From: Macrostomum hystrix
Lineage: Eukaryota; Animalia; Platyhelminthes
DNA: 64,000 nt
Direction of reading: 5' to 3'
Assembly: GCA_950097015.1 (NCBI GenBank)
Contig: CATNEN010000001.1
Location: forward strand, 15,624,001-15,688,000
A model generated the notes under the pieces. It was given only the letters and a program-made list of their open reading frames with translations, did no database searches and was not told where the DNA came from. How positions within the stretch are numbered: position 1 is the stretch's first letter; every line of letters starts with the position of its first letter. The translations under genes and the position numbers were made by a program. Shown one piece after another: positions 2,031-41,974 of the stretch.

Positions 2031-4045
2031 CTACTCAACACCAGAGAGAGGAATCACCAGCCATGCCTTTCCAGTCTTGCGAGGGAACAGAAAGCACTTC
2101 CTGTGGGGAGTGCCAGTAACAAAAGATAGTGTTTTACAATAGACTCCGATACCCAGTTTTGAGGACGGATATGGATAGTCATACAAGTCCTTTTGCAGCG
2201 ACAGAATATTGCCAGTTACTTGGTCACCAAGAACAGAAGTAATCCGAACAACAGCCATTCACGATGCAACAGTTGTCGGGCATCTTAACAGAGTACTTAA
2301 TGGGCTGAATTGGGTTGCTGACTAGTAAGTCGCGAAGTGAAAGCATTTGATTTAGCAAGTAAGATGATACAAAGCGCGTTACTCGAAGGCGACCCTTTAA
2401 GTGAGAGAGGTAGTTCTCATATGGAAAGGCCGAAAAGTTGGACATATTTCCACGTTGCCTCGCGTATCGAAACAAGTGCAAAAGAACGTGAGCATTGTGA
2501 GTCATGAAACTGTTGCCGTACAGTTGAGCTGCGTCATACACAAAACGTTTCATGGCAGATTCAGCGGCATCAAGAAGTTCAGGCTGTGGGCTATCAGAGC
2601 AAAGAACATAACAGGCAAAGTGAAATAGAAGAAAATTCCTGTACAGCTCTGTTGGCAGAAATTTGCGAAAAAATACGGGCGCACATACAAAGTCCACGTG
2701 CGGAACTCGCTGGCTTTGAAATGTCCGAGTTCTCGGTCGATTCTCCGAGGGCGTCTTTGGAAATTTGTCGGTGCATATAGCGCACGTGATTCGGCAAAAT
2801 CAGAAAGTGCGGAAACTTGATCCGGCCTAATTTTGCGCCGCCGTCCGTCATCCATCGCAAAGAGGAAGGTGAAAAGACGCCTAGCGACGCCTAGAAAGAG
2901 CAGGTGCATTGGCTCCGGTGGGCAAGCATCAGGTAGTTGCAAGCCTGGCAGTGACAGGAGCGGACTTGGTTCATGCCGCTGGTTGGATTCCCTGCAGTAG
3001 TTGTTAGCGATAAAGAGTAGTAATAATAATAATTGATTACACCTGCCCCAATCGACAGCACAGCCGCAGCTAATGCGCGGCGCATCTGAAGGCTGCGTAC
3101 GGCTGTTCAGTCCATGGACTGGGGGGACGCCGCACCCACCTTCAATTACCTCAGCTAATGCCGGTACCTATTTAACAGCTGGGTGAACTGAAGCACTGCA
3201 GAGTTAAGTATCTTGCTAAAGGACACAAATTGTTTCAGTGGAGTCGGGAATCGAACTATTGTATATTATTGTATATTGAATATTGTATATTTTATATTGT
3301 ATATAGTAAGTATGTGAATCATTTTTTAGATTTAAAAGGACAGACATATAGACAGTCTGAATCGGAATTACATTTCTTTAGTTGCCATATCCCGATACAC
3401 CCATTTGCACATTTATATGATAACTGATTCACGTATTAAGACAACGTCAGGTCAGGTTCGTAGACATGTAAAAAACATGTCAGATATCCTGCCATGTAGG
3501 CATACAGATGTATAAGCTGGTGTACAAAATTCGCAAAAGCACACACACACACAACCCCATGCACAAACACGCACCTATTAAAACGGTAATCGTCAGCTGT
3601 GCGACACTCTCCGACTTCGACAGGGTAGACTATTCGCCGGTCGACCATCTGGGCTACCACTCTGCAGTAGGGGCAGCCGTGATGTGCGTTGTGGCCCAAA
3701 GTTGCGGTGATGAAGGACCGCGCTGGCGTGTCGCAAATGAACGCGCTGGCGTGTCCTTGATAAAGTCGGCCAGGTACTCGGTAAGAGGTGGTTTAACCAA
3801 CCCAGCATACACAGCAACAGGAAGTGGGCGACAGAATCTCGAAAACTTAACGATAATAGGCCATGCCGCGTAATTTGACGAATTGTAAATCGGCATTCCG
3901 TCAATGCCAACATCAATGTCTAGTTCCAACCTTGCTCTGTCATTCTAGGTGGCTTCCGGATTTCCAAGATCCAACATGCCGCCGCGAATCAGGAACGCCA
4001 GGTTCGAAGCAATACCGATGTAAGAAAAGTGTCCACTACCCATTA
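2031..4045 (-). pseudogene. EnSpm/CACTA(CMC)-type DDE transposase, frameshifted, intron-containing
   Basis: Colinear minus-strand fragments: ...IDVGIDGMPIYNSS..WPI (3654-3929), GHNAHHGCPYC (3436-3699), PPEPMHLLFLGV..RRPR..FKASEFRTW (2550-2942), LYG..FMTHNAHVLLHL..SAFPYENYL (2224-2697). A phase-compatible intron at ~2992-3574 (AG|GTGCGT...CTGCAG|G) contains a SINE. Confidence 0.8.
3030..3257 (-). mobile_element. tRNA-derived SINE (family A), partial
   Basis: Minus strand has the B-box GTTCGATTCC followed by TGTCCTTTAGCAAGATACTTAAC..CAGTTCACCCAGCTGT, a CORE/Nin-like central domain. Related copies at 14178-14757 and 15110-15335. Confidence 0.75.
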
Positions 4046-4154
4046 TTAACCTTTATTTAGTGTCCATTATTATTTAGCATTGATGTGAAAGGGTTCCTGA
4101 AAGAACAGGAGCCCTGTAATTTAGAAACACGAGCATCGCCATCAATTTCAGGCT

Positions 4155-4415
4155 GATCGGGCTGACTGGAACTGGGATTCTCTGACTGCTCGTCGGTGTG
4201 ACTAGAAGTCTCTGGCTGCTCAGGGTGACTGGAACTGGAGTTCTCTGACTGCTCGTCGGCGGTGTGACCGGAAGTCTCTGGTTGCTCCGGGTGACTGGAA
4301 CTGGAGTTCTCTGACTGCTCGTCGGCGGTGTGACCGGAAGTCTCTGGTTGCTCAGGTGACTGGAACTGGAGTTCTCTGACTGCTCGTCGGCGGTGTGACT
4401 GGAAGTCTCTGGAAG
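4155..4415. repeat. ~60-bp tandem repeat, ~4 copies
   Basis: Recurring GACTGGAACTGGAGTTCTCTGACTGCTCGTCGGCGGTGTGACCGGAAGTCTCTGG; accounts for the repetitive ORF 4074-4478. Confidence 0.85.
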
Positions 4416-4534
4416 TTCCATAAAGATCCGATGCAACCCCTGCAGGAACCGACTTTGGTTAGCCAAGAAGTTCCTCATGGAGCTGTCCCGACCCCCGTGA
4501 AGCAGGTTTTTGCAGGGGTTGAAGCAGGGTCAGG

Positions 4535-5925
4535 AAGAAGGATGGCATCTAAGGATGTGCGCTGATTATAGCGTTCATGTGAATGCCAAAATCAGGTCGG
4601 AAGACTATCCGATTCCCAGCGTGGAGTGCTTGCTGGCAAAACTGAAGAACGCCAAGAAGTTTGCAAAGGTTGACTTGCGCTCTGCCTACTGGCAGATCGA
4701 GCTGGATGAAGCTGCACAAGATTTGTCGATCATCAACACGTCCAAGGGACTGTTCCGTGTCAAGCGACTTCAGATGGGAATGAAGAATGCATCCTTCATT
4801 TTCCATCGGACAATGGAGAACATTCTGTCAGACATAAGGGGTGTTCTCATCTACCAGGACGACGTTCTGGTCTTCGCCGAGAATGCAGAGTCGCTGCAAA
4901 AGCGACTCCGCGCCGTGAAGACGAGGCTTGTGGAAAAGCATGTCACAATCAACGAGAGCAAGTGCGTTCAAGAGACAGACGAGATCTCATTCCTAGGCTT
5001 TAAGATCTCGGCTGCTGGCATCCAGCCAGACGACAGGCTCGTGGAGAAGATCCGCAGCATTGCCACGCCCAGTGACAAGAAGGAACTCGAGCACTTCATT
5101 GGACTCATCAACTTCTTTGGTAGGCTGATACCAAACTTCTCCGGCAAGGCGAAGCCCCTCAACGACTTGCGGCGCTCTGACGTGCCATTTGCCTGGACTG
5201 AGAGCTGCGAGAATGCGTTTCGTGTCCTAAAAAAGGAAATCGCATCACAGCCAGTTGTTCAGCCCTACTCTCTAGAGAAGGAACTCACCCTCACGACTGA
5301 CGCTTCCAAAGGTGCCCTCGCCGGCGTAGTGACTCAAGAAGGACACCCGGTCATTTACATCTCCAGAAGCCTCTCAAAGGCTGAACAAAACTACTCCAAC
5401 ATCGAGAGGGAGGCACTGGCAGTCTTTTGGGCAGTCAGTCGCCTCAAGCACTACCTTCTTGGCCGACACTTCAACATTCAGACGGATCACCAACCCCTCA
5501 TTCGCCTGCTGGGTACATCTGGTGGCATCCCGCTCAGCACATCCACACGCATCTCACGATGGGCCCTGGCAATGATGCACTTTGATTACGCTATTCGCTA
5601 CATCCCAGGCAAGGACATCCCGCACGCCGACGCGCTTTCTCGCTTGCGCTTCACAGATTCAACTACCGATTCAAAGGTGTCCAGTGCGATCAACTGCGTG
5701 GCATTCGAGTCCCCTGTCATTGCTCGTCATCGACTCGCATCTGAGATGGATGCGGACATCTTCATCCAAAAGATCATTCAACGCGTTCGCTCTGGTGACT
5801 GGAGTCGATGCTCACAAGCTGAGAAACTGTTTCAGAATGTCTCAGAGATGCTCACACTTGAGGATGGCCTGCTGTTCAGAGGGCGCCAAGTCTTCATGCC
5901 GCCTCGACTCAGAAGAGGGTCCTGA
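4535..5925 (+). mobile_element. Ty3/Gypsy pol fragment (RT + RNase H), truncated at both ends
   Basis: LRMCADY, KVDLRSAYWQI, YQDD, RNase H TTDAS/YSNIEREALAV/QTDHQPL/HADALSR. No protease, integrase or LTRs. Confidence 0.93.
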
Positions 5926-30805: not shown

Positions 30806-32307
30806 TCAGTTCAGCAAGTTTTGCCCCCCTTCGGGGACTTCCCGGTCCGCAACAACCACGCCAGCTACCGAATTTTTAATATTGCCTGTGCCACATCTAC
30901 AACTTAACAATTTCTGTAAAGCGACCTTAGTTAAGCGTGTGCCATTGCTTTTCGGTGACCTTGTAGGCTGGGCTTCGACGCTGGGGGTGATTAAAAAACC
31001 CGGGAATGTAAAATACGGTTGCTGGAACGGTAGATGTTATTTTGTAACGTGACAGTGAAAAGGAGATGTGTGCCAATTATAAATTCTTGAACTTGGGACC
31101 AAAATACAACAAATAGGTAAAAAAAGTGGCAGCTGTTTGGCTTTCAGGCTTTTTTGTTCAGTGTGAAAGGTAAAAATATAGATTTTTTAAACAAAAATCG
31201 GTTGCTGCAATTTACTCAGTGTGGCACAGTTGTGCCAACTCGAAAATATTGACCTAAACGAAGGTATCCATGTGTGCCATACTTCAGAATACATTTACCC
31301 ACAACATTTCACACCTTTTTGGCAATTTTGTTGTGAGCAGACAATCGGAGCATAATAGCACAAATATTTTCGTTGCATGATCAAGCTCTTGTACGATTAT
31401 AGCGAGCAAGACTAATGCACATAAAATAAATAGTGCGAATAATAAAATACCTTACCATTTGGTTAGCAGCATAAAGCCTTTTTATACTGGTGTTTGTTTA
31501 CTTCGATAGAAAAGAATAAATTCAAAATTCAAGACGTTGACCACCCGAGCTACTTTAAACTGCGCAAAGCAAATAAAATAATAGGAATCTCGAATATTGC
31601 CTTCCTCCTATGGGCTTATATATATTTTTGGAGGAATCTCGAACATTGCCTTCCTCCTATGGGCTTGTATATATTTTTGTATATATACTTATATTTATAT
31701 TTGTATATTTTGTATATATATATATATATATGTACTCTATAATTTAGTAAAGGTGGTGTTCTAATTTGTCGAAATATTACAGATCCTATACTAGCTATAA
31801 GCCTTGCAATGCCTTAGTTGCCTAGTTGAGGGTGAAGATGCATTTTTACAATGTATGTAGTATTTATAATATAATGCATGCTCCACGAAGTTAATGGTCC
31901 TTCTAAATATAGCTTTTTTCTATGGCCTTCTCTAAGCTGATTTTATAATAGGCCTTTTCCTATAGAAAGGATACTATACTATAAAAAACCTCTGCTAAGT
32001 TGTTTGCTTACCCAAAAGAAAGCAAAAGTTGTTTGCTAAAGAAAAGTAGGCTAATAAATGGATGCATAATTGTGAATATACAAAGATCCATCACCATGTT
32101 AATAATGATAGGCATAAAGGTAAATCTTGAAAGTCTAGTCTATTAATGTAAAAGGATTTATTTTGTCTATAATTAACCAAGGTGTTCTTTTGTCACATTG
32201 GTTTTTGGGGGTAAACTTTGAAGAAAAGTATACTGGTAGCAATCTTACTAAATATATTTAGCAGGAATCAAAATGTTGCACTGCAAATGATATTTTGGAT
32301 TTGATAC

Positions 32308-33238
32308 TTCGATCCAGCTTGTAACAACTCGATCCAACCTCAATCCAACTTCGATCCAACTTCTAACAACTCGATCCAACCTCAATGCAACCTCGATCCA
32401 ACTTTAATCCAACTTCTAACAACTCGATCCAACCTCAATCCAACTTCTAACAACTCGATCCAACCTCAATGCAACCTCGATCGAACTTTGATCCAGCTTG
32501 TAACAACTCGATCCAACCTCAATCCAACCTCGATCCAACTTTAATCCAACTTCTAACAACTCGATCCAACCTCAATGCAACCTCGATCCAACTTTGATCC
32601 AACTTCTAACAACTAGATCCAACCTCAATCCAACATTGATCCAACTTTGATCCAGCTTGTAACAACTCGATCCAACCTCAATCCAACCTCGATCCAACTT
32701 TAATCCAACTTCTAACAACTCGATCCAACCTCAATCCAACATTGATCCAACTTTGATCCAGCTTGTAACAACTCGATCCAACCTCAATGCAACCTCGATC
32801 GAACTTTGATCCAGCTTGTAACAACTCGATCCAACCTCAATCCAACCTCGATCCAACTTTAATCCAACTTCTAACAACTCGATCCAACCTCAATGCAACC
32901 TCGATCCAACTTTGATCCAACTTCTAACAACTAGATCCAACCTCAATCCAACATTGATCCAACTTTGATCCAGCTTGTAACAACTCGATCCAACCTCAAT
33001 CCAACCTCGATCCAACTTTAATCCAACTTCTAACAACTCGATCCAACCTCAATGCAACCTCGATCCAACTTTGATCCAACTTCTAACAACTAGATCCAAC
33101 CTCAATCCAACATTGATCCAACTTTGATCCAGCTTGTAACAACTCGATCCAACCTCAATCCAACCTCGATCCATCCTCAATCCAACTTCTAACAACTCGA
33201 TCCAACCTCAATGCAACCTCGATCCAACTTCGATCGAA
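32308..33238 (+). repeat. Tandem array inside left TIR (~10-11-bp subunits with higher-order structure)
   Basis: GATCCAACCTC/AATCCAACTT(T)/CTAACAACTC units. Confidence 0.95.
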
Positions 33239-33338
33239 GTATATTGATTATCGAATATGATGAAGCATAGCGAAGTGTTATCATATATCCGCCAGTTCTT
33301 GTCTTCAGTTTCGTTTATTTCTTTTCACACTTTTTCAG

Positions 33339-34313
33339 GAGAAGCTGCTGAAGAGTTCCTGCGACGCAGACCTTCCGGATCCCGGGCCTGTTTTACCCTG
33401 TCCTACGCTGCCGTCTATTGTTGTCTTCTCTCTGTCTGACGGCCAAGCAATTGACACTGTTTGTCAACGTCTCTGTGCGTGTACTCGAGCTTTTAGTGCC
33501 CTGAAGATTCGAGTTCGCGAAGGTTTCCGTCGATGCGGTCACGATCAAGTTGCTGTCGTACAGCTGGTCGCTGATTCGACTAAAGCAGCCTTCCTACACA
33601 GTGTTTACGGCAGCGGTGGAAAGTGCCAGGCGGAGCATAGAAGAAACGGAGCTATTTGGTTGCAAGCAGCAGTTCATCCAACAGTTCTAAGTCCGACTGA
33701 AAATGCTTCTTTCTCTTCGCGCCGTCAGCCTGCAATTTGGCGCTTGCCTTCAAGTCGGCCGGTACAGCGTTTGCGTCAACAGGTACTGCACGATATTCGG
33801 CAGTTGATTGCTGTCGCCGACATCACTGCGCTCCGAACACTATCTGCTTTTATTCGCTGCTTGTCTAGCATGCAGCGAATGCCTCAAAGGCGGCGACGAC
33901 GAACACAGAACGGAAACCAACTGTATGCGGACGAGCGGCAGCAGGAAGAGGAAGAGAGGAAGAAGCAGCAGCAGGAAGAGGAAGAGAGGAAGAAGCAGCA
34001 GGAAGAGGAAGAGAGGAAGAAGCAGCAGCAGGAAGAGGAAGAGAGGAAGAAGCAGCAGGAAGAGGAAGAGAGGAAGAAGCAGCAGCAGGAAGAGGAAGAG
34101 AGGAAGAAGCAGCAGCAGGAAGAGGAAGAGAGGAAGAAGCAGCAGCAGCAGGAAGAGGAAGAGAGGAAGCAGCAGCAGGAAGAGGAAGAGAGGAAGAAGC
34201 AGCTGGTTACAAAGACGAGAAAGCGAAATATGGAGATACTCAGTCGGACAGATCCCTTAGCTCCAAAACGAGCATTGCGGCAGCGTCTGCAGTTGGTCAA
34301 GAATAATCGGTAA
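33339..34313 (+). CDS. Second gene of the Foldback element; unknown protein with (QQQEEEERKK)n charged helix
   Basis: Frame open from the acceptor TTTTCAG|GAG at 33339 to the stop at 34313 (~324 aa). About 8 charged repeats at 33938-34202. Start codon not identified. Confidence 0.55.
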   Translation, partial: EKLLKSSCDADLPDPGPVLPCPTLPSIVVFSLSDGQAIDTVCQRLCACTRAFSALKIRVREGFRRCGHDQVAVVQLVADSTKAAFLHSVYGSGGKCQAEHRRNGAIWLQAAVHPTVLSPTENASFSSRRQPAIWRLPSSRPVQRLRQQVLHDIRQLIAVADITALRTLSAFIRCLSSMQRMPQRRRRRTQNGNQLYADERQQEEEERKKQQQEEEERKKQQEEEERKKQQQEEEERKKQQEEEERKKQQQEEEERKKQQQEEEERKKQQQQEEEERKQQQEEEERKKQLVTKTRKRNMEILSRTDPLAPKRALRQRLQLVKNNR

Positions 34314-35243
34314 TAAAATCATATGGTAATGTGCTTAAAAAGGTATGCTAGTACATTTTTACGTCTCCGTTGCAGGCATCTTAGTAACCCTGAAGTCGTA
34401 TTTTTCTGACAAAAACGTATCCTACATTTATTTGTCTAGTTTCAAATCAAGTAATGATGTTTATAAACTTGTCTTCCTACAGTAGTTTATAGTCACTAAC
34501 TATGTATAGATAAGCTCTATGTACTTCAGACAAAAGTGTGACAAAAGTCTTGAGGTCCCCAATTGTCTGTGCCTCTATACAGATACAAAATATGTATCTA
34601 TTTACCCTTCCTATATACCCTGATACTTAAAATGCACGTCCCTGCTTTCGTTCATTTAATATATACTTTTTGCGAGTTTTTCGACGTTAATTCTATTTTA
34701 CAAGGACTGATGAACTTTGTTTGACTAAGCTTGAAAACCTGGTTCAGTTGTTCGCTTTACGTACGGTTCTAGTGTAGTAATTTTTCGCAGTAGCTAATTA
34801 CGCAATGTTACGCAATAATACATGTTGTACTTTGAATGTACTTCTTATTAGACAGCTGTCACCTTCACGAAAAAGAAAAATAAATTTATTTGGTGAATGT
34901 GCACGTTCGGGTGCCTCAATGAAAAAAAGACTGAACAAATTGTGATTTCAGTACATTTCAATCAACTTTTACTCTGTGCTTTTCACTAACAAAAGGTGGT
35001 AAATGCTATTGATTCAATAAAAAGAAACTGGCAGTAAATACAGCACGTACACTTGTGCCTTGACACACGTAGCTAACTGTACAACAACTTTTGGAGAAAA
35101 CGGCTGCCTATAAACAAGAAGAGAGGTTGGATGGAGTCGTTACAAGCTGGATCAAAGTTGGATTGAAGTTGTTTCACGTTACATTGAGTTGTTAGAAGCT
35201 GGATCGAAGTTAATATATTCAGAATCGGTCTCAAATTGTATCG

Positions 35244-38200
35244 CTACTGGCCTGATGTTTCCTCCGAGTTAGTAATCGTGTAAATGTACAGGTTAGCCCT
35301 GTTTCCCAGAGGTGGCTGGCGTCCACGCTCTACAGCGGCGGTCATGACACCCTTGCTTCTTGCCAAGTCGTCGTATTTAATAGTTCCTGAGGCGTACCAG
35401 ATGCGGGACAAATAGTGCCCCCCTTCCTTGAAAGTTGTAGCACGATGTTGATATCTGAAGATTGTGAATTTGCCGTTACAGCATAGAAGTAAAGTTAGCA
35501 ATGCTTATGTATTAGTGCATGCAAGACAGCGATATGTAGAGCCTTTAAAAATGAACTAAGAATACTACGTTTCTCTCTTACTGAATACTGCAGTCCGAAA
35601 AGGGGCGAACCACTTGAGAAGGGGCAGCTCGGCTGGCGCCCAATGGATCAGAGTCTGTGGAGGAGATGACTAGAACCGGCGGAGGGCTGAACTGAAACTT
35701 CGGAGCCTGACTTCGACGCACGTGATCGCAGACTGAGCACGGCCCATAGGACTCAGAAGAAAGAAAATCTCGCAGATAATCCTCGACTGTGCCTCCAGCT
35801 GCACAGTTACTTCCAATAGTGATTGCGTGTCCATAGGAAAGTTGCTCTGGATTTGGGCAACGCGGGTTGAGGCACCGGCTTTGATACACTAGTCTGTGCT
35901 TTGAACCAAGGAGCTTCATACATACGTCAAGCTCACTGCCGAAGAGGCCAATTTCGATTTTCTGATTTGTCCTGATGAAACGTTCACTGCTGAATGCGTC
36001 GAGTTGAAGAAGAAGCTTTGCTCGTGCATGCAAAGCTTGCTTCTCGGTGGTGGACTGCGATGCTTCGTTCAGAAAAACTACCAATGGATCCTCAACAATA
36101 TGTTGGAGACTTGCTTTGAATCCAGGTTCATCCAGATAGGCTATGGTTAAGGCCGTGAGCAAGTTGTCTGCTGTGCAAGCGTTGTACACGTATACGCTCA
36201 TAGATCCGCCTCGAGAATCTGGCACACCAGTAGCCAAACCGGAGCTCCTCAACGTGGCAAATTCCAATGCCTGTCGAGGTGGTCTTCCCTCTAAAGGATA
36301 GGTCCTGGAAGTCTACAAGAGAGAAATGGAACAGGAACACAAAGTTATCACCGTCTGTTAAATGGCCACCAACTGACGAAACAATAAGCACTGTCCTACG
36401 TAGACCATTGTACTTATGGTGTACGTTATGTCCGTTGCAATAAATGAAATAAATGAAATGTAAAATACATTAATAATAAAGAGTAATATAAAATACAAGA
36501 AAATAAATACGTAATGCAATAAATAATGAACAATCCACTACTTGCCGACGGTACATAAGCCGGTAGACGACGCTTTTTGTTTACTACAGGTTGCAGCGGG
36601 ACATCTGCAGGCCGAGCCTGTTGAGAGTTGACCATTGGACAAAAGATGTCAGACTTTCGTTTCCGGGTTTTATTCGACAATGGCACCGTTGGCGCACCTT
36701 GCTGTGGCTGCGACTCTGACGCTGGTGACGAATGCTGCTCTGGCTGCGACTCTGACGCTGGTGGCGAATGCTGCTCTGGCTGCGACTCTGACGCTGGTGG
36801 CGAATGCTGCTCTCGCTGCGACTCTGACGCTGGTGGCGAATGCTGTGGTGGCTGCAGCTCTTCTTCAATATCATCTTCTTCCAAAGAAGTCACACCTGTT
36901 ACACGGTACATGTCTCTCTTGAACAGAATTTCGTTCCCATTGTGATGAGAATGGAGCGCCTGGATGAACTCAGAGAGACTGACTTGTTTACTCTCAAAGA
37001 CACTGTTCTTCATAAGGCCAATCCAGCGCTCCGTGTGCCCCTCCGTAAATCGTGAACTGCTGGGCATAATGCCGCAGATAAGAGGGAGATACGGAGTGAA
37101 TGTATTGGTTATGCGTTCAGCCAAAGCCGGACATACATAGGCGTTCAGACTATCAGTAGACTCGTCAAACGGCAGTGCACTCACTTCCAGTTGAACTTCT
37201 TGCCGGATTTGTTCAGCCCGCTGCCAGAATGGGGACCGGCGCATTATGGTTCCGTCTGCATTGACTTCTATTTGTGAAGATTCGTTCGTCTCTTGATCCA
37301 GAGTCTCGAACTCGGCACGGACGCTCTCCATGTTGCTCATTACTCTTAGAAATTTTTTCGGACAACATCCTAGATGCCGATCCATTCTTTCAACTACGGC
37401 TTCCGTAGGAGCCATGAGCACAAGGTAGATGGCTCTCAACAGCCTGTCAGCTGTTTGAATGCTGTCGATCGCTACCATGCACACCATAGACCGCAGCCAG
37501 AACTGTTTGACTGCCCTGTTACTGCAATTGGTTACTTCCTTCAAGCGAGTCATCTCCTTGACTAGATGACTTCGGCCAAGACCGATGACAGGAAGGGGAT
37601 CCCAATCGCTGTCCTTAGTCAAGTGATGAAAGCATTCTTTGATGTAGAGCGACAGCGATAGACCATGAAAGCAGCCGATGAGTCCGTGTAAAGTGGCAAA
37701 ATTGAAGTCTGTAACCACCTGCGAAACGCGAACTGTTGACAAAAATGTCGTACATTCTCTAAACCAAACGTCCAGGCAAAAGCGCAGGGTGATTCCTGTC
37801 TGAGATGTCGATAGAATCTCCAACAATGGCATCACTTTCCCACCAACGGTAGGGTTCTGAAGCACCAGAGCGTGATAGTAGATGGGCTTGGTGCAACTGC
37901 TGGGGCGCTGATGGATTGGAGCAGCAGTTGAATCCATTCCCATACGTATGGGCCAGCCCCTCAGCTGCATCTCCCGTAGACTCTGAAAGGGACGGGAATG
38001 GAATAGAATGATGGTCTCGGCCCGACCCTCACTCTGGATAACCTTTCTGATATACGCGGGTTGTAGGACCCTCTCAAGTCGGCGCAGTTCTATCAGGTCA
38101 TCCATGTCTGGAACTCCCAGCTCAGCTCTGCGCAGTCGCTCAGCTGCAATGCGTAGGGCCTCTGACGAAGGCACCTCACTGAGGGGTTCGTTGGCGGCAA

Positions 38201-39124
38201 TGGCCGCTGCGACCCTGTAAGAGTTCGAAACCAGCGTCGATCTCGCGAGCTTATATCGCCGTTCACCAGTCAGCCGCCGACTTCGAGCCGCAGGGTGGTT
38301 CTCCAATGGCGCAGTGACTGTCCGGAGTTCCCATGACGTCAAACTCGCATCTTTGGCTTCCACAATAAACGTTGCTGGACAGGTAGGCTCGCAGCAGTAG
38401 ACATGAGCGTAATGAATCCCCGTCTTTCTGCGAAACTTTCCTACTTTTTTCGCGAGACAGCACGGTTCAACCGAAAGAGCAAAAAGGCGAACCACGTCGC
38501 TGAACCAATCTGGCTTTAAAACACCGTCACGGAGAAGTCCTGCGGGCTCGCTGAAGCTCTGGTGGAAGATAGGCAGAATTGTCGAGGAGGAAGAACTGAA
38601 AAGAGATGGTTTTAAAGGAAGACATTGTCAGTGCCAATGTCATCTGCCAATGACATCTGACTAAATAAAGGGCACGGACAGTTCGCAACAGGCATGCAGA
38701 AATAGTACGCGAAACAAAAAGGCTATCTTACATGCAGCGCGTCTCATCAGTTGAAGAGTCTGCGTTACATTCAGCTGTTTCGATGGGAACGTCCTCAGAA
38801 ATGTCCTTGTAATTACGTAGCAGAAATGTATAGACGTACTTTTTGTTTACATCAGAAGGAGGAACGTGAAAAAATCTGCACAGACGCGGCAAGCGATCGT
38901 CATCTGACCGATGATGGCTAGGAAGTGGAGAACTAATATACTCCTCAGGGTCAATACCGCACAGCTTGAAGAAATCAAGCAGACTTGAACGAGTCAGTTG
39001 CCGTTCTAGAATAAGGAGAGACGAATAAAAAACGAATGTACTATACTCGTATAGTATATCAACTACGCCTTTCACGCCCCAGATTCTGAGCCGTTGTAAA
39101 CTTACTTAAAGAATCATCCGCCAT
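35244..39124 (-). CDS. NOF-like MULE-type DDE transposase with C-terminal USP-like cysteine protease domain, ~1094 aa, 5 exons
   Basis: Exons 39124-39106, 39005-38732, 38595-36546, 36312-35582 and 35454-35244 sum to 3285 nt, all phases compatible (third intron GC-AG). Kozak CCACCATGG. Motifs MGMDSTA, IYYHALV, VVTDFNFATLHG, RSHLVK, TEGHTERWIGLMK; C-terminal NACTADNLL and GHYLSRI..KYDDL. Confidence 0.78.
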
Positions 39125-39267
39125 GGTGGACCAAAACTGAAAGGTCCTGAAATTGAAATTGAAAGGAGGCGAAACTATAAATAACAATAAATAAACGAAA
39201 CTGAAGACAAGAACTGGCATATATGATAACACTTCGCTATGCTTCATCATATTCGATAATCAATATA

Positions 39268-39882
39268 CTTCGATCGAAGTTGGATCGAGGTTGTATCGAG
39301 GTTGGATCGAGTTGTTAGAAGTTGGATTAAAGTTGGATCGAGGTTGGATTGAGGTTGGATCGAGTTGTTACAAGCTGGATCAAAGTTCGATCGAGGTTGC
39401 ATTGAGGTTGGATCGAGTTGTTACAAGCTGGATCAAAGTTGGATCAATGTTGGATTGAGGTTGGATCGAGTTGTTAGAAGTTGGATTAAAGTTGGATCGA
39501 GGTTGGATTGAGGTTGGATCGAGTTGTTACAAGCTGGATCAAAGTTGGATCAATGTTGGATTGAGGTTGGATCTAGTTGTTAGAAGTTGGATCAAAGTTG
39601 GATCGAGGTTGCATTGAGGTTGGATCGAGTTGTTAGAAGTTGGATTAAAGTTGGATCGAGGTTGGATTGAGGTTGGATCGAGTTGTTACAAGCTGGATCA
39701 AAGTTCGATCGAGGTTGCATTGAGGTTGGATCGAGTTGTTAGAAGTTGGATTGAGGTTGGATCGAGTTGTTAGAAGTTGGATTAAAGTTGGATCGAGGTT
39801 GCATTGAGGTTGGATCGAGTTGTTAGAAGTTGGATCGAAGTTGGATTGAGGTTGGATCGAGTTGTTACAAGCTGGATCGAAG
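39268..39882 (-). repeat. Tandem array inside right TIR (shorter than the left)
   Basis: Reverse complement of the 32308-33238 array, with fewer units. Confidence 0.95.
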
Positions 39883-41352
39883 TATCAAATCCAAAATATC
39901 ATTTGCAGTGCAACATTTTGATTCCTGCTAAATATATTTAGTAAGATTGCTACCAGTATACTTTTCTTCAAAGTTTACCCCCAAAAACCAATGTGACAAA
40001 AGAACACCTTGGTTAATTATAGACAAAATAAATCCTTTTACATTAATAGACTAGACTTTCAAGATTTACCTTTATGCCTATCATTATTAACATGGTGATG
40101 GATCTTTGTATATTCACAATTATGCATCCATTTATTAGCCTACTTTTCTTTAGCAAACAACTTTTGCTTTCTTTTGGGTAAGCAAACAACTTAGCAGAGG
40201 TTTTTTATAGTATAGTATCCTTTCTATAGGAAAAGGCCTATTATAAAATCAGCTTAGAGAAGGCCATAGAAAAAAGCTATATTTAGAAGGACCATTAACT
40301 TCGTGGAGCATGCATTATATTATAAATACTACATACATTGTAAAAATGCATCTTCACCCTCAACTAGGCAACTAAGGCATTGCAAGGCTTATAGCTAGTA
40401 TAGGATCTGTAATATTTCGACAAATTAGAACACCACCTTTACTAAATTATAGAGTACATATATATATATATATATACAAAATATACAAATATAAATATAA
40501 GTATATATACAAAAATATATACAAGCCCATAGGAGGAAGGCAATGTTCGAGATTCCTCCAAAAATATATATAAGCCCATAGGAGGAAGGCAATATTCGAG
40601 ATTCCTATTATTTTATTTGCTTTGCGCAGTTTAAAGTAGCTCGGGTGGTCAACGTCTTGAATTTTGAATTTATTCTTTTCTATCGAAGTAAACAAACACC
40701 AGTATAAAAAGGCTTTATGCTGCTAACCAAATGGTAAGGTATTTTATTATTCGCACTATTTATTTTATGTGCATTAGTCTTGCTCGCTATAATCGTACAA
40801 GAGCTTGATCATGCAACGAAAATATTTGTGCTATTATGCTCCGATTGTCTGCTCACAACAAAATTGCCAAAAAGGTGTGAAATGTTGTGGGTAAATGTAT
40901 TCTGAAGTATGGCACACATGGATACCTTCGTTTAGGTCAATATTTTCGAGTTGGCACAACTGTGCCACACTGAGTAAATTGCAGCAACCGATTTTTGTTT
41001 AAAAAATCTATATTTTTACCTTTCACACTGAACAAAAAAGCCTGAAAGCCAAACAGCTGCCACTTTTTTTACCTATTTGTTGTATTTTGGTCCCAAGTTC
41101 AAGAATTTATAATTGGCACACATCTCCTTTTCACTGTCACGTTACAAAATAACATCTACCGTTCCAGCAACCGTATTTTACATTCCCGGGTTTTTTAATC
41201 ACCCCCAGCGTCGAAGCCCAGCCTACAAGGTCACCGAAAAGCAATGGCACACGCTTAACTAAGGTCGCTTTACAGAAATTGTTAAGTTGTAGATGTGGCA
41301 CAGGCAATATTAAAAATTCGGTAGCTGGCGTGGTTGTTGCGGACCGGGAAGT

Positions 41353-41974
41353 CCTTCGGGGAGCAGAAATAATTAATATTCGTCGAATATATACCCTTTA
41401 GCAGGAGTACTTTAAGTGTCTTTCTTAAGCTTAAGCTTAAAATAGGAATTTTTGGAGATCGTTAATAACGCATTTTAGGTAAAACAAAACTATCAACTTT
41501 TTACAGTTTTTTAGTTTGGAGCCCTGTATATGTCAACGTGTTTGATAAAAATTATTTTTTTTATTTAGTTTATAAAACTGTTGAGATCACTTTTTTAGTT
41601 GTTACTGAAAATAAATTAAATAATATTCCAAGAAATTGCGACTTTCCGAGAAATGACTTGCTTTATTCCGATTTTCTTGTTGCTTGTATTGCTCATGTGT
41701 ACTACAGTTTTATACACATCCCGAGAAATTTTTTACTTTCTTCATTTGTAAGTGAATTTCTTAGCCCTGCTCATCGTACTAACTGCGACTGCAATGTTCC
41801 GAACAATAAGTAGCTCAGCATTGCAACTATTGCCCTTGAATGAGGCCCCTCTTATTATAATAAATGACTTAAAGAGTCAGTTCAATGCAGCTATCTCATT
41901 GTGAATGGACTTTGCAAAAGCAACTGGAGCTACATCCTTCGACCTTTGGTTTGACACTTTTAATAAAGCTAACA
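41353..41974 (-). mobile_element. Second copy of the Helitron-like 3' region (continues from 30813-30836)
   Basis: Nearly identical to 15806-16430; ORFs 15994 and 41538 differ at 2 aa. Confidence 0.85.

What the first reader, a model, noticed from the sequence alone, without database searches (positions are those of the whole stretch)
35244..39124. Five scattered ORFs splice into one ~1094-aa transposase-deubiquitinase-like fusion
Seen: all four introns are phase-compatible (one is G|GCAAGT, GC-AG) and give a stop-free 3285-nt CDS. The central part has MULE-like D (MDSTA), D (VTDFN), xxH (RSHL) and E (HTERW). After a Q/S/P-rich repeat linker comes NACTADNLL, CxxxxC/CxxC and GHY..KYDD, which resemble the Cys and His boxes of USP (C19) proteases. 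Inference: the transposase carries its own ubiquitin/Ubl protease, analogous to Ulp1-bearing MULEs but of a different protease class, possibly to counter silencing or degradation.
Basis: partly seen in the sequence, partly recalled or inferred. Interest (0 to 1): 0.85.

Follow-up and report, generated by a model that had tools for sequence, protein, structure and literature searches.

The report
Foldback transposase with ubiquitin-protease-like tail
This is the five-exon transposase gene of a recently mobile Foldback (NOF-type, Mutator-superfamily) jumping gene in a Macrostomum-like flatworm. The protein ends in a ubiquitin-protease (USP-fold) domain with its catalytic residues intact, a layout shared with insect NOF-like transposases and related to the uncharacterised vertebrate protein C14orf28.

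Summary
The gene lies inside a 10.5-kb Foldback element with perfect 2.1-kb inverted arms and a 9-bp target duplication. At least four copies sit at different sites. I never joined the exons. The single-gene model rests on divergent paralogs that carry core, linker and C-terminal domain in one open frame, and on exon-by-exon profile matches that run in order. The core is a DDE transposase, homologous to insect NOF-like proteins (hhalign E 1e-32). Its best structural match is the IS256 transposase ISCth4. The tail, modelled from an intronless paralog, has a USP fold (Z 10-12, all top hits USPs). A profile of the family hits USP12/USP46 at E 8e-6 with the Cys, His and Asp positions aligned, and Cys and His never vary. 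The fusion is ancestral to the NOF clade, not new here. UniRef already labels two insect members "USP domain-containing", but I found no paper describing it. Protease activity, substrate and splice junctions remain untested (no usable RNA). The scan found this before on another copy in this genome (s1-339201), with the same conclusion.

The parts
30828..30836 (.). Left 9-bp target-site duplication, CCTTCGGGG
   Evidence: the same 9-mer flanks both ends; two other copies have unrelated flanks up to this exact terminus.
30837..33288 (+). Left terminal inverted repeat of the Foldback element (terminus ACTTCCCGGTCCG...). The outer ~2.1 kb is 100% complementary to the right arm. The inner part is made of 53/106/159-bp tandem subrepeats.
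   Evidence: arms 30835-32920 / 39269-41354, 2086 nt, 100%; I2 32744-33288 / 39219-39763, 96%; tandem arrays 32309-33235.
39219..41352 (-). Right terminal inverted repeat with the same tandem subrepeats
41353..41361 (.). Right 9-bp target-site duplication, CCTTCGGGG
39106..39124 (-). Exon 1 (19 nt, start codon; donor A|GTAAGT). Its use as the true start is inferred only.
38732..39005 (-). Exon 2 (274 nt), N-terminal region. Weak collinear match to the N-terminus of the insect NOF-like profile.
   Evidence: NOF profile positions 56-80, E 0.008, marginal.
36546..38595 (-). Exon 3 (2050 nt). It holds a Cys/His-rich N-terminal beta region, the DDE transposase core (D 37934-37932, D 37709-37707, H 37568-37566, E 37031-37029), a Q/S/P-rich 36-nt repeat linker (36700-36845) and a basic VVNKKRRL motif (36587-36564). 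It ends at a GC donor (36545-36544). An alternative GT donor lies at 36554-36553.
   Evidence: core model.
35582..36312 (-). Exon 4 (731 nt), the first three quarters of the USP-fold domain. Cys box YNACTADNLL at 36186-36157 (catalytic Cys 36177-36175); zinc-ribbon-like CLNPRC at 35874-35857 and CSVC at 35739-35728.
   Evidence: positions 41-224 of a family profile built without window sequences, E 1e-26.
35244..35454 (-). Exon 5 (211 nt including TAG), the last quarter of the USP-fold domain. His box GGHY...KYDD at 35423-35367 (His 35417-35415, Asp 35372-35370).
   Evidence: profile positions 238-293, matching from the exon's first residue, E 4e-9.

Best explanation
The locus is the transposase gene of an autonomous, recently active Foldback-type DNA transposon of the NOF clade of the Mutator superfamily. 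The element spans 30837-41352 and has a 9-bp target duplication. The roughly 1094-residue product has four parts: an N-terminal Cys/His-rich region that presumably binds DNA, an RNase-H-fold DDE catalytic core with an alpha-helical insertion domain, a low-complexity repeat linker ending in a basic motif that looks like a nuclear localisation signal, and a C-terminal USP-fold papain-like cysteine protease domain. That domain belongs to the C14orf28-like subfamily and keeps a Cys-His-Asp triad. Shown here: the architecture, the homologies, the predicted fold and the conservation of catalytic residues. Inferred: the core carries out cut-and-paste transposition. Also inferred: the tail is an active isopeptidase that removes ubiquitin or a ubiquitin-like modifier, from the transposase itself or from host chromatin or repair factors at the element, and so protects transposition from degradation or silencing.
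For: Element: perfect 2086-nt inverted arms with tandem subrepeats and a 9-bp duplication. At least four copies exist, two of them shown to have different left flanks.

One gene: core, linker and tail lie in a single open frame in paralogs at 26-36% identity (L007 889 aa, L011 1024 aa; L032 1283 aa also includes the His box). NCBI's Macrostomum lignano model PAA68264.1 joins the equivalent last exon. The window's exons match the insect NOF profile in order: E2 56-80, E3 147-690, E4 856-974, E5 1073-1101. Exons 4 and 5 occupy adjacent positions, 41-224 and 238-293, of the protease profile.

Core: hhalign of a flatworm-only alignment against insect NOF-like proteins gives probability 99.9%, E 9.6e-33 over 493 columns. 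That set includes CAG5093138.1, named 'Similar to NOF: 120.7 kDa protein in NOF-FB transposable element'. D263, H310 and E489 are invariant. hhalign against this genome's own Pfam-MULE proteins gives E 5.6e-4 with both Asp residues in register. All nearest language-model clusters that carry a Pfam family are MULE. The AF2 model (pLDDT 71) best matches ISCth4/IS256 at Z 11.7, then Hermes 10.7 and P element 10.6.

Tail: the AF2 model of the intronless paralog has pLDDT 77 and pTM 0.76. Foldseek gives 94 hits at E<=1e-3; all those listed are USP-fold chains. VIA gives Z 12.1 for USPL1 and 10-11 for USP30/12/46/14, CYLD and PAN2. A search over 48,161 representative chains that does not depend on Foldseek puts USP-fold chains at ranks 1-29, coronavirus PLpro at 8-9, and other papain-like folds at or below about 7. 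A profile of 20 family members hits USP12/USP46 at E 7.8e-6, and all 39 hits are USPs. NTC aligns to GNTC, CxxC to CEEC, and HY..YDG to GHY..FDD. The catalytic Cys is present in 100/100 sequences and His in 78/78. The third residue is D in 62, N in 10 and S in 1.

Ubiquitin docking: weak support only. Score 0.47 against a best control of 0.12. The mark was reached by 51 of 78 solved complexes and 2 of 108 mismatched pairs. At 0.60 or under it was reached by only 5 of those 78 and by all 4 mismatches that passed (of 180). Runs agree in at least 79% of contacts, and the partner's pLDDT is at least 82.
Against: No enzymatic or RNA evidence was obtained. The only run that held part of the stretch gave one 256-nt contig inside exon 3. 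Neither Pfam MULE nor Pfam UCH reaches its gathering score on this family. In distant homologs both stay below threshold (MULE 18-19 bits against 27.6; UCH 16.2 against 23.9). The fold was predicted on a paralog only about 16-24% identical to the window's tail, from a shallow alignment of 12 rows. The window's own tail was not folded, because that would need exons 4 and 5 joined. TM-scores to solved USPs are low (0.3-0.47). The ubiquitin docking pass is weak, and because USP-ubiquitin complexes are solved it may only reflect likeness. The best structural match, USPL1, is SUMO-specific, so the substrate is open. In the flatworm family the D/C of the Mutator (C/D)xxH motif is Gly.
Confidence: 0.72

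Rival explanations
1. The USP-fold domain is a cis-acting processing protease. It cuts the transposase polyprotein, for example in or after the repeat linker, to release the DDE core. It would not act on host ubiquitin or ubiquitin-like conjugates.
For: Babu et al. 2006 (PMC1702500) proposed such self-processing for the OTU domain fused to Medicago MULE transposases. USP-fold viral proteases (coronavirus PLpro, Z 8-9) cleave polyproteins at LxGG. A motif like LL[KR]NGG lies 15-20 residues upstream of the Cys box in many members, and the window has SRGG at 36216-36205.
Against: The Gly-Gly is not conserved: NYS, NHG, NGN and NYN occur at the aligned place, and the window has RSSG there. In the model this segment is a beta strand inside the domain. 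The standalone relative C14orf28 has no polyprotein to process. Nothing was tested.
Confidence: 0.13
2. The tail is a catalytically silent USP-like module, as in PAN2 or USP39/Sad1. It would serve only to bind ubiquitin, a ubiquitin-like protein or another partner, for example to tether the transposase to modified chromatin.
For: PAN2 pseudo-UCH and the yeast splicing factor 4msx are among the top structural matches. The residue three places after the catalytic Cys is Asp in 95/100 family members instead of the Asn of canonical USPs. Pfam UCH is not reached.
Against: Known pseudo-USPs have lost catalytic residues. Here Cys (100/100) and His (78/78) never vary and the third residue is D/N in 72/73, across families under 20% identical. 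That pattern fits selection for catalysis.
Confidence: 0.1
3. The gene model is wrong. The transposase would end at the stop at 36426 (intron 3 retained), and exons 4-5 would be a separate gene or a dead remnant.
For: No RNA junctions were obtained. Intron 3 has a non-canonical GC donor. If that intron is retained, the exon 3 frame ends at 36426.
Against: Paralogs and homologs from other phyla have no intron there and read straight from core to tail. Exons 4 and 5 are intact and 99-100% identical in all full copies. Their profile matches are collinear with exon 3.
Confidence: 0.04

Closest known systems
NOF protein of the Drosophila FB-NOF Foldback element and insect NOF-like proteins (e.g. 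CAG5093138.1, 'Similar to NOF'; A0AAU9THP6 and A0AAV7X230, named 'USP domain-containing protein' by UniRef)
   Same: Foldback arms with tandem subrepeats. The same order of parts: N-terminal region, DDE core (IDATGG / VVxDxS / DxSH / VE in insects), variable linker, and a C-terminal NTCxxD ... CxxC ... GHY..YDD domain. Core homology is E 9.6e-33 and tail homology E 5.5e-7.
   Different: Only about 20% identity. The flatworm gene has four introns. The (C/D)xxH motif reads GRSH. D. melanogaster NOF itself could not be fetched, so the link runs through proteins that their annotators named as similar to it.
Cellular USP deubiquitinases (MEROPS C19; USP12/USP46, USP30, USP14, USP7) and the SUMO-specific USPL1
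   Same: Predicted thumb-palm-fingers fold (Z 10-12). Cys box NTC, zinc-ribbon cysteines, His box and following Asp all align to USP12.
   Different: Below the Pfam UCH threshold. NTCxxD replaces GNTCYxN. The domain is compact (about 290 residues). It sits at the end of a transposase. Its substrate is unknown.
C14orf28 / DRIP1 (vertebrates) and 'C14orf28 homolog' proteins of bivalves
   Same: These are the nearest named relatives of the tail. They are the top language-model cluster (0.96). A profile made only of this genome's copies retrieved XP_069772444.1 at E 1.5e-6 and XP_045214923.1 at E 3.9e-8 from 1.84 billion proteins. C14orf28 was classified as a papain-like deubiquitinase domain with a second fingers-like domain in PMC10318531.
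   Different: C14orf28 is a standalone host protein of about 300-330 residues with no transposase. That paper does not mention transposons. The direction of descent is unresolved (tree).
Other transposon-borne Ub/Ubl proteases: an OTU domain on Medicago MULE transposases (PMC1702500), VTD and OTU domains of Helentrons (PMC9741609), and Ulp1-type tails on MULE/Rehavkus-like elements (own knowledge; also noted by the scan in this genome, s1-085069 and s1-344280)
   Same: A mobile element carries its own papain-like Ub/Ubl-type protease, usually at the C-terminus of its main protein. VTD domains of transposons were shown to be active deubiquitinases.
   Different: This is a different protease family. 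No Ulp1/SENP, OTU or VTD structure is among the 50 matches listed. The tail here is USP-fold.

Membership tests
Mutator superfamily, NOF/Foldback clade | Significant homology of the transposase core to NOF-like proteins | tested here: met
   hhalign of flatworm-only alignment A3 against insect NOF-like alignment A7: probability 99.9%, E 9.6e-33, 493 columns. Exon 3 alone against the insect profile: E 4e-32.
Mutator superfamily, NOF/Foldback clade | DDE triad on an RNase-H fold with an alpha-helical insertion between the second D and the E | tested here: met
   D263, H310 and E489 are invariant in 9 sequences. The first D is in DSTG/DATG. The model matches ISCth4 (IS256) at Z 11.7, Hermes at 10.7, P element at 10.6, plus RAG1 and Transib.
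Mutator superfamily, NOF/Foldback clade | Pfam MULE (PF10551) at its gathering score | tested here: not met
   No hit on the exons or paralogs. A whole-genome scan with PF10551 finds 55 other loci but none of this family. Only 18-19 bits against 27.6 in distant homologs P0026 and P0065. hhalign to this genome's own MULEs: probability 30%, E 5.6e-4.
Mutator superfamily, NOF/Foldback clade | 9-bp target-site duplication and long inverted arms containing tandem repeats | tested here: met
   CCTTCGGGG on both sides. Arms of 2086 nt at 100% with 53-bp subrepeats. 9 bp is the size reported for MULEs and Foldback-like Tm1 (PMC3169594).
Mutator superfamily, NOF/Foldback clade | (C/D)xxH motif between the second D and the E | tested here: inconclusive
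   His is invariant. Insect NOF-like proteins have DxSH, but the flatworm families have GRSH, with Gly at the D/C position.
USP/UBP cysteine proteases (MEROPS C19) | USP fold (thumb, palm, fingers) | tested here: met
   Model of paralog L032:2411-3394 (pLDDT 77). USP-fold chains fill ranks 1-29 of a search over 48,161 representative chains, Z 9-11.8. 292 chains reach Z>=8. The window's own tail was not folded, because exons were not joined.
USP/UBP cysteine proteases (MEROPS C19) | Cys box with catalytic Cys, and His box with catalytic His followed by Asp/Asn, aligned to those of solved USPs | tested here: met
   Profile A4 against PDB sequences: USP12 at E 7.8e-6. NNtC aligns to GNTC, and HY...YDg to GHY...FDD. 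Cys 100/100, His 78/78, D/N 72/73. The window has C at 36177-36175, H at 35417-35415 and D at 35372-35370.
USP/UBP cysteine proteases (MEROPS C19) | Pfam UCH (PF00443) at its gathering score | tested here: not met
   No hit on the window exons, paralogs, L032 tail or C14orf28 homologs. 16.2 bits against 23.9 in P0065.
USP/UBP cysteine proteases (MEROPS C19) | Isopeptidase activity on ubiquitin or a ubiquitin-like modifier | not testable with these tools
   There is only a docking test with this genome's own ubiquitin: weak support, score 0.47 against a best control of 0.12. It may reflect memory of solved USP-ubiquitin complexes.
C14orf28/DRIP1-like USP subfamily | Closest sequence relatives are C14orf28 homologs | tested here: met
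   ray and clam 'C14orf28 homolog' proteins are retrieved by a profile built only from this genome.
C14orf28/DRIP1-like USP subfamily | Standalone host gene without a transposase | tested here: not met
   Here the domain is the C-terminus of a transposase inside inverted repeats.
Ulp1 (C48)-bearing MULE / Rehavkus-type transposases | C-terminal Ulp1/SENP-fold protease, often with a PHD finger | tested here: not met
   No Ulp1/SENP structure is among the 50 matches listed. No PHD or Peptidase_C48 Pfam hit.

The most novel reading that the evidence does not exclude
The USP-fold tail of NOF/Foldback transposases and the vertebrate gene C14orf28/DRIP1 would be one family linked by domestication: C14orf28 would be a transposon-derived protease that lost its transposase. 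In the transposon the domain would be an active de-ubiquitinase or de-SUMOylase that protects transposition from host degradation or SUMO-dependent silencing. That would make USP enzymes a further protease class, alongside Ulp1, OTU and VTD, recruited independently by mobile elements.
Probability: 0.3. Interest if true: 0.75.

Novelty: new member of a known kind. Interest (0 to 1): 0.55.

Why it matters
Foldback/NOF elements cause chromosome rearrangements in Drosophila, yet their large protein has stayed poorly characterised. This locus shows that the whole clade, from insects to flatworms, carries a USP-fold protease with an intact active site. I found no mention of such a domain in the two Mutator surveys I text-searched (PMC6446971, PMC13359780), and no held paper pairs FB-NOF or Foldback with ubiquitin terms. 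Only automatic database names point to it. The element adds a USP-fold case to the Ulp1, OTU and VTD proteases already known on mobile elements. It gives a young, intact, multi-copy element in a laboratory flatworm genus for testing why transposons carry such enzymes. It also offers a lead to the origin and function of the uncharacterised human protein C14orf28.

Tried and rejected
- **Pfam on every exon and on three long paralog ORFs:** nothing meaningful.
- **phmmer of exon 4 against PDB sequences:** noise only. The 12-row profile A2 against PDB also found nothing. Only the 20-row profile A4 reached USPs.
- **Two word-index protein searches with the core,** one single sequence and one alignment: blank. 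This reflects the word index and the length window, not absence. The full HMM search and a search seeded with P0048 did find relatives.
- **PF10551 over the whole genome:** does not touch this family.
- **RNA:** one candidate run, one 256-nt contig inside exon 3, no junctions.
- **53-aa ORF at 38527-38688:** its UBA_8 hint (E 0.13) was rejected, because that frame is not the coding frame of exon 3.
- **First tail alignment (A1):** it misplaced the exon-5 fragment, so I replaced it with A2.
- **Right ends of the other copies:** Only their left flanks were compared.
- **Phantom paper PMC2927773:** not held.
- **Joined sequences:** I did not build, search or fold the joined 3285-nt CDS or the joined protein. 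All tests were done exon by exon or on natural intronless relatives.
Full report
**What is there**

The finding lies on the minus strand, inside a larger structure. Positions 30835-32920 and 39269-41354 are a 2086-nt inverted repeat with 100% complementarity. It extends inward through arrays of 53/106/159-bp tandem units. The true termini are 30837 and 41352, because the 9-mer CCTTCGGGG flanks both ends. Two other copies of the element have unrelated sequence right up to the same ACTTCCCGG terminus. This is therefore a 10.5-kb Foldback-type DNA transposon that has moved recently. The genome (220 Mb, 42 contigs) holds three copies of the gene at 99-100% identity, plus one interrupted copy. Near-identical NCBI proteins come from Macrostomum lignano, so the host is that flatworm or a very close relative.

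**The gene model**

I located each boundary by coordinate.

| Exon | Coordinates | Length | Donor |
|---|---|---|---|
| E1 | 39124-39106 | 19 nt | GT |
| E2 | 39005-38732 | 274 nt | GT |
| E3 | 38595-36546 | 2050 nt | GC |
| E4 | 36312-35582 | 731 nt | GT |
| E5 | 35454-35244 | 211 nt, including the stop | none |

All acceptors are AG.
- Phases are compatible, and each exon is open in its own frame.
- The GC donor (TCG|GCAAGT) is plausible, but a GT donor 9 nt upstream (TAT|GTACCG) is also in phase 0. Only RNA can decide between them.
- RNA gave nothing useful. One run held a 256-nt contig inside exon 3.

**Evidence that it is one gene**

The genome contains diverged paralogous families at 26-36% identity. 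In these the core, a repeat linker, a basic VVNKKRR-like motif and the C-terminal domain are read in one uninterrupted frame: L007 889 aa, L011 1024 aa, L012 775 aa. In a still more distant family the whole protein, including the His-box region, is one 1283-codon open frame (L032).

The NCBI model PAA68264.1 (1106 aa) of the L007-type family joins the last exon at the equivalent place. A protease-domain profile built without any window sequence matches exon 4 at positions 41-224 (E 1e-26). It matches exon 5 at positions 238-293, starting at that exon's first residue (E 4e-9). An insect-only full-length profile matches E2, E3, E4 and E5 in collinear order.

**The core**

- Pfam finds nothing, and PF10551 does not detect this family in the genome.
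- A flatworm-only alignment aligns to 13 insect proteins with probability 99.9% and E 9.6e-33 over 493 columns. That set includes one named [quoted passage not shown].
They line up with DGTF and MxDFE of this genome's bona fide MULEs, at a modest E 5.6e-4.
- All nearest language-model clusters that carry a Pfam family are MULE.
- The AF2 model (pLDDT 71) matches RAG1, Transib, Hermes, P element and ISCth4. After re-alignment ISCth4 comes first at Z 11.7, roughly tied with Hermes and P element. ISCth4 belongs to IS256, the bacterial kin of Mutator.
- Together with the 9-bp duplication, this places the protein in the NOF/Foldback clade of the Mutator superfamily as a divergent member.

**The tail**

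Because exons 4 and 5 could not be joined, I modelled the natural intronless paralog L032:2411-3394. The model has pLDDT 77 and pTM 0.76.

- Foldseek returned 94 hits at E<=1e-3; every listed hit is a USP-fold chain.
- Re-alignment gave Z 12.1 for USPL1 and 10-11 for USP30, USP12/46, USP14, CYLD and PAN2.
- A search of 48,161 representative chains that does not rely on Foldseek put USP-fold chains at ranks 1-29. Coronavirus PLpro scored 8-9, and other papain-like folds scored about 7 or less.
- At sequence level, a 20-member profile hits USP12/USP46 at E 7.8e-6, and all 39 hits are USPs. NTC aligns to GNTC, a CxxC to the zinc ribbon, and HY...YDG to GHY...FDD.
- Over all relatives collected, the Cys is present in 100 of 100 and the His in 78 of 78. 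The following residue is Asp or Asn in 72 of 73.
- The window's copy has all three residues.
- A docking test with the genome's own ubiquitin gave only weak support. The score was 0.47 against a best control of 0.12. The mark was reached by 51 of 78 solved complexes and 2 of 108 mismatches. At 0.60 or under it was reached by only 5 of those 78 and by all 4 mismatches that passed (of 180). Runs agree in at least 79% of contacts and the partner's pLDDT is at least 82. The result may simply reflect likeness to solved USP-ubiquitin complexes.

**Distribution and relatives**

A profile made only from this genome's tails found just 76 proteins at E<=1e-3 among 1.84 billion representatives. Several are proteins of 1000-1300 residues with the same core in front. 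Others are fragments that span the junction between core and tail.

Two hits are named "C14orf28 homolog", one from a ray (E 1.5e-6) and one from a clam (E 3.9e-8). C14orf28 is also the top language-model cluster. A 2023 survey classified human C14orf28 as a papain-like deubiquitinase domain with a second fingers-like domain, and did not mention transposons (PMC10318531).

A quick tree places the ray protein among mostly standalone sequences, inside the half of the tree that also holds the flatworm transposon copies. Support is weak and the tree is unrooted, so the direction of descent is open.

**What is known**

Mobile elements with Ub/Ubl-type proteases are established. Examples are OTU on Medicago MULEs (PMC1702500) and VTD and OTU on Helentrons, where VTD was shown to be active (PMC9741609). 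Ulp1-type tails are known on MULE/Rehavkus-like elements. That last point rests on my own knowledge and on scan notes s1-085069 and s1-344280, which I did not test.

For NOF/Foldback I found no paper linking the protein to ubiquitin or a protease. The two Mutator surveys I searched do not mention one. However, UniRef names two insect members "USP domain-containing protein", so automatic annotation already sees the domain.

An earlier follow-up in this scan, on another copy in the same genome (s1-339201), reached the same reading. My tests were run before I saw that note.

**Verdict**

The element is a new flatworm member of the NOF/Foldback family. The USP-fold tail is an ancestral feature of that family and has been little noticed. 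Its activity, its substrate (ubiquitin, SUMO or the protein itself) and its benefit to the transposon are inferred, not shown.

Noticed in passing
window 33660-34313 (+); also L035:1477-2457 (+) and L039:3376-3861 (-): There is a second ORF inside the element, convergent with the transposase gene. It ends in E/K/Q-rich 30/57-nt repeats. Paralogous Foldback families carry a similar ORF in the same relative position, with a shared N-terminal stretch. Pfam gives nothing. It may be an accessory protein of the family.
   Followed up: partly
window 36313-36545 (intron 3): This 233-nt AT-rich intron, which holds 28-bp tandem repeats at 36447-36515, is absent from the paralogous families and from homologs in other phyla. 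Those read straight through this point. It looks like an intron gain, or an insertion that is spliced out. A GT donor at 36554-36553 is an in-frame alternative to the GC donor.
   Followed up: partly
window 36205-36216 (SRGG); aligned motif LL[KR]NGG in P0003, P0004, P0009, P0014, P0059 and L007: Many family members have a ubiquitin-tail-like LxNGG motif 15-20 residues upstream of the catalytic Cys. It could be an autoprocessing site or only a structural strand. The Gly-Gly is not conserved at the aligned place in the window's copy.
   Followed up: no
L031 (G000:C2:3385500-3393500), open frame 2359-5682: A copy of the L032-type family reads in frame from its G/R-rich linker into a reverse-transcriptase-like sequence of a non-LTR retrotransposon. 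The tail has been replaced by a nested insertion.
   Followed up: no
P0032 (573 aa), P0069 (614 aa), P0050 (1308 aa): Two anonymous proteins carry two tandem copies of the same USP-like domain. In P0050 the domain follows a long N-terminal region that does not match the NOF core profile. The domain may therefore also ride on other kinds of element.
   Followed up: no
window 35100-35220: A short stretch of the same 53-bp subrepeat that builds the inverted arms lies just downstream of the stop codon, in the orientation of the right arm. It is an internal remnant of the arm repeats.
   Followed up: no
G000:C1:913176, C25:7215843, C32:960114: Other long open frames of about 1060-1090 codons give weak PF10551 matches (E 0.07). 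They may be further divergent Mutator-like families in this genome, perhaps the Ulp1/PHD type noted elsewhere by the scan.
   Followed up: no
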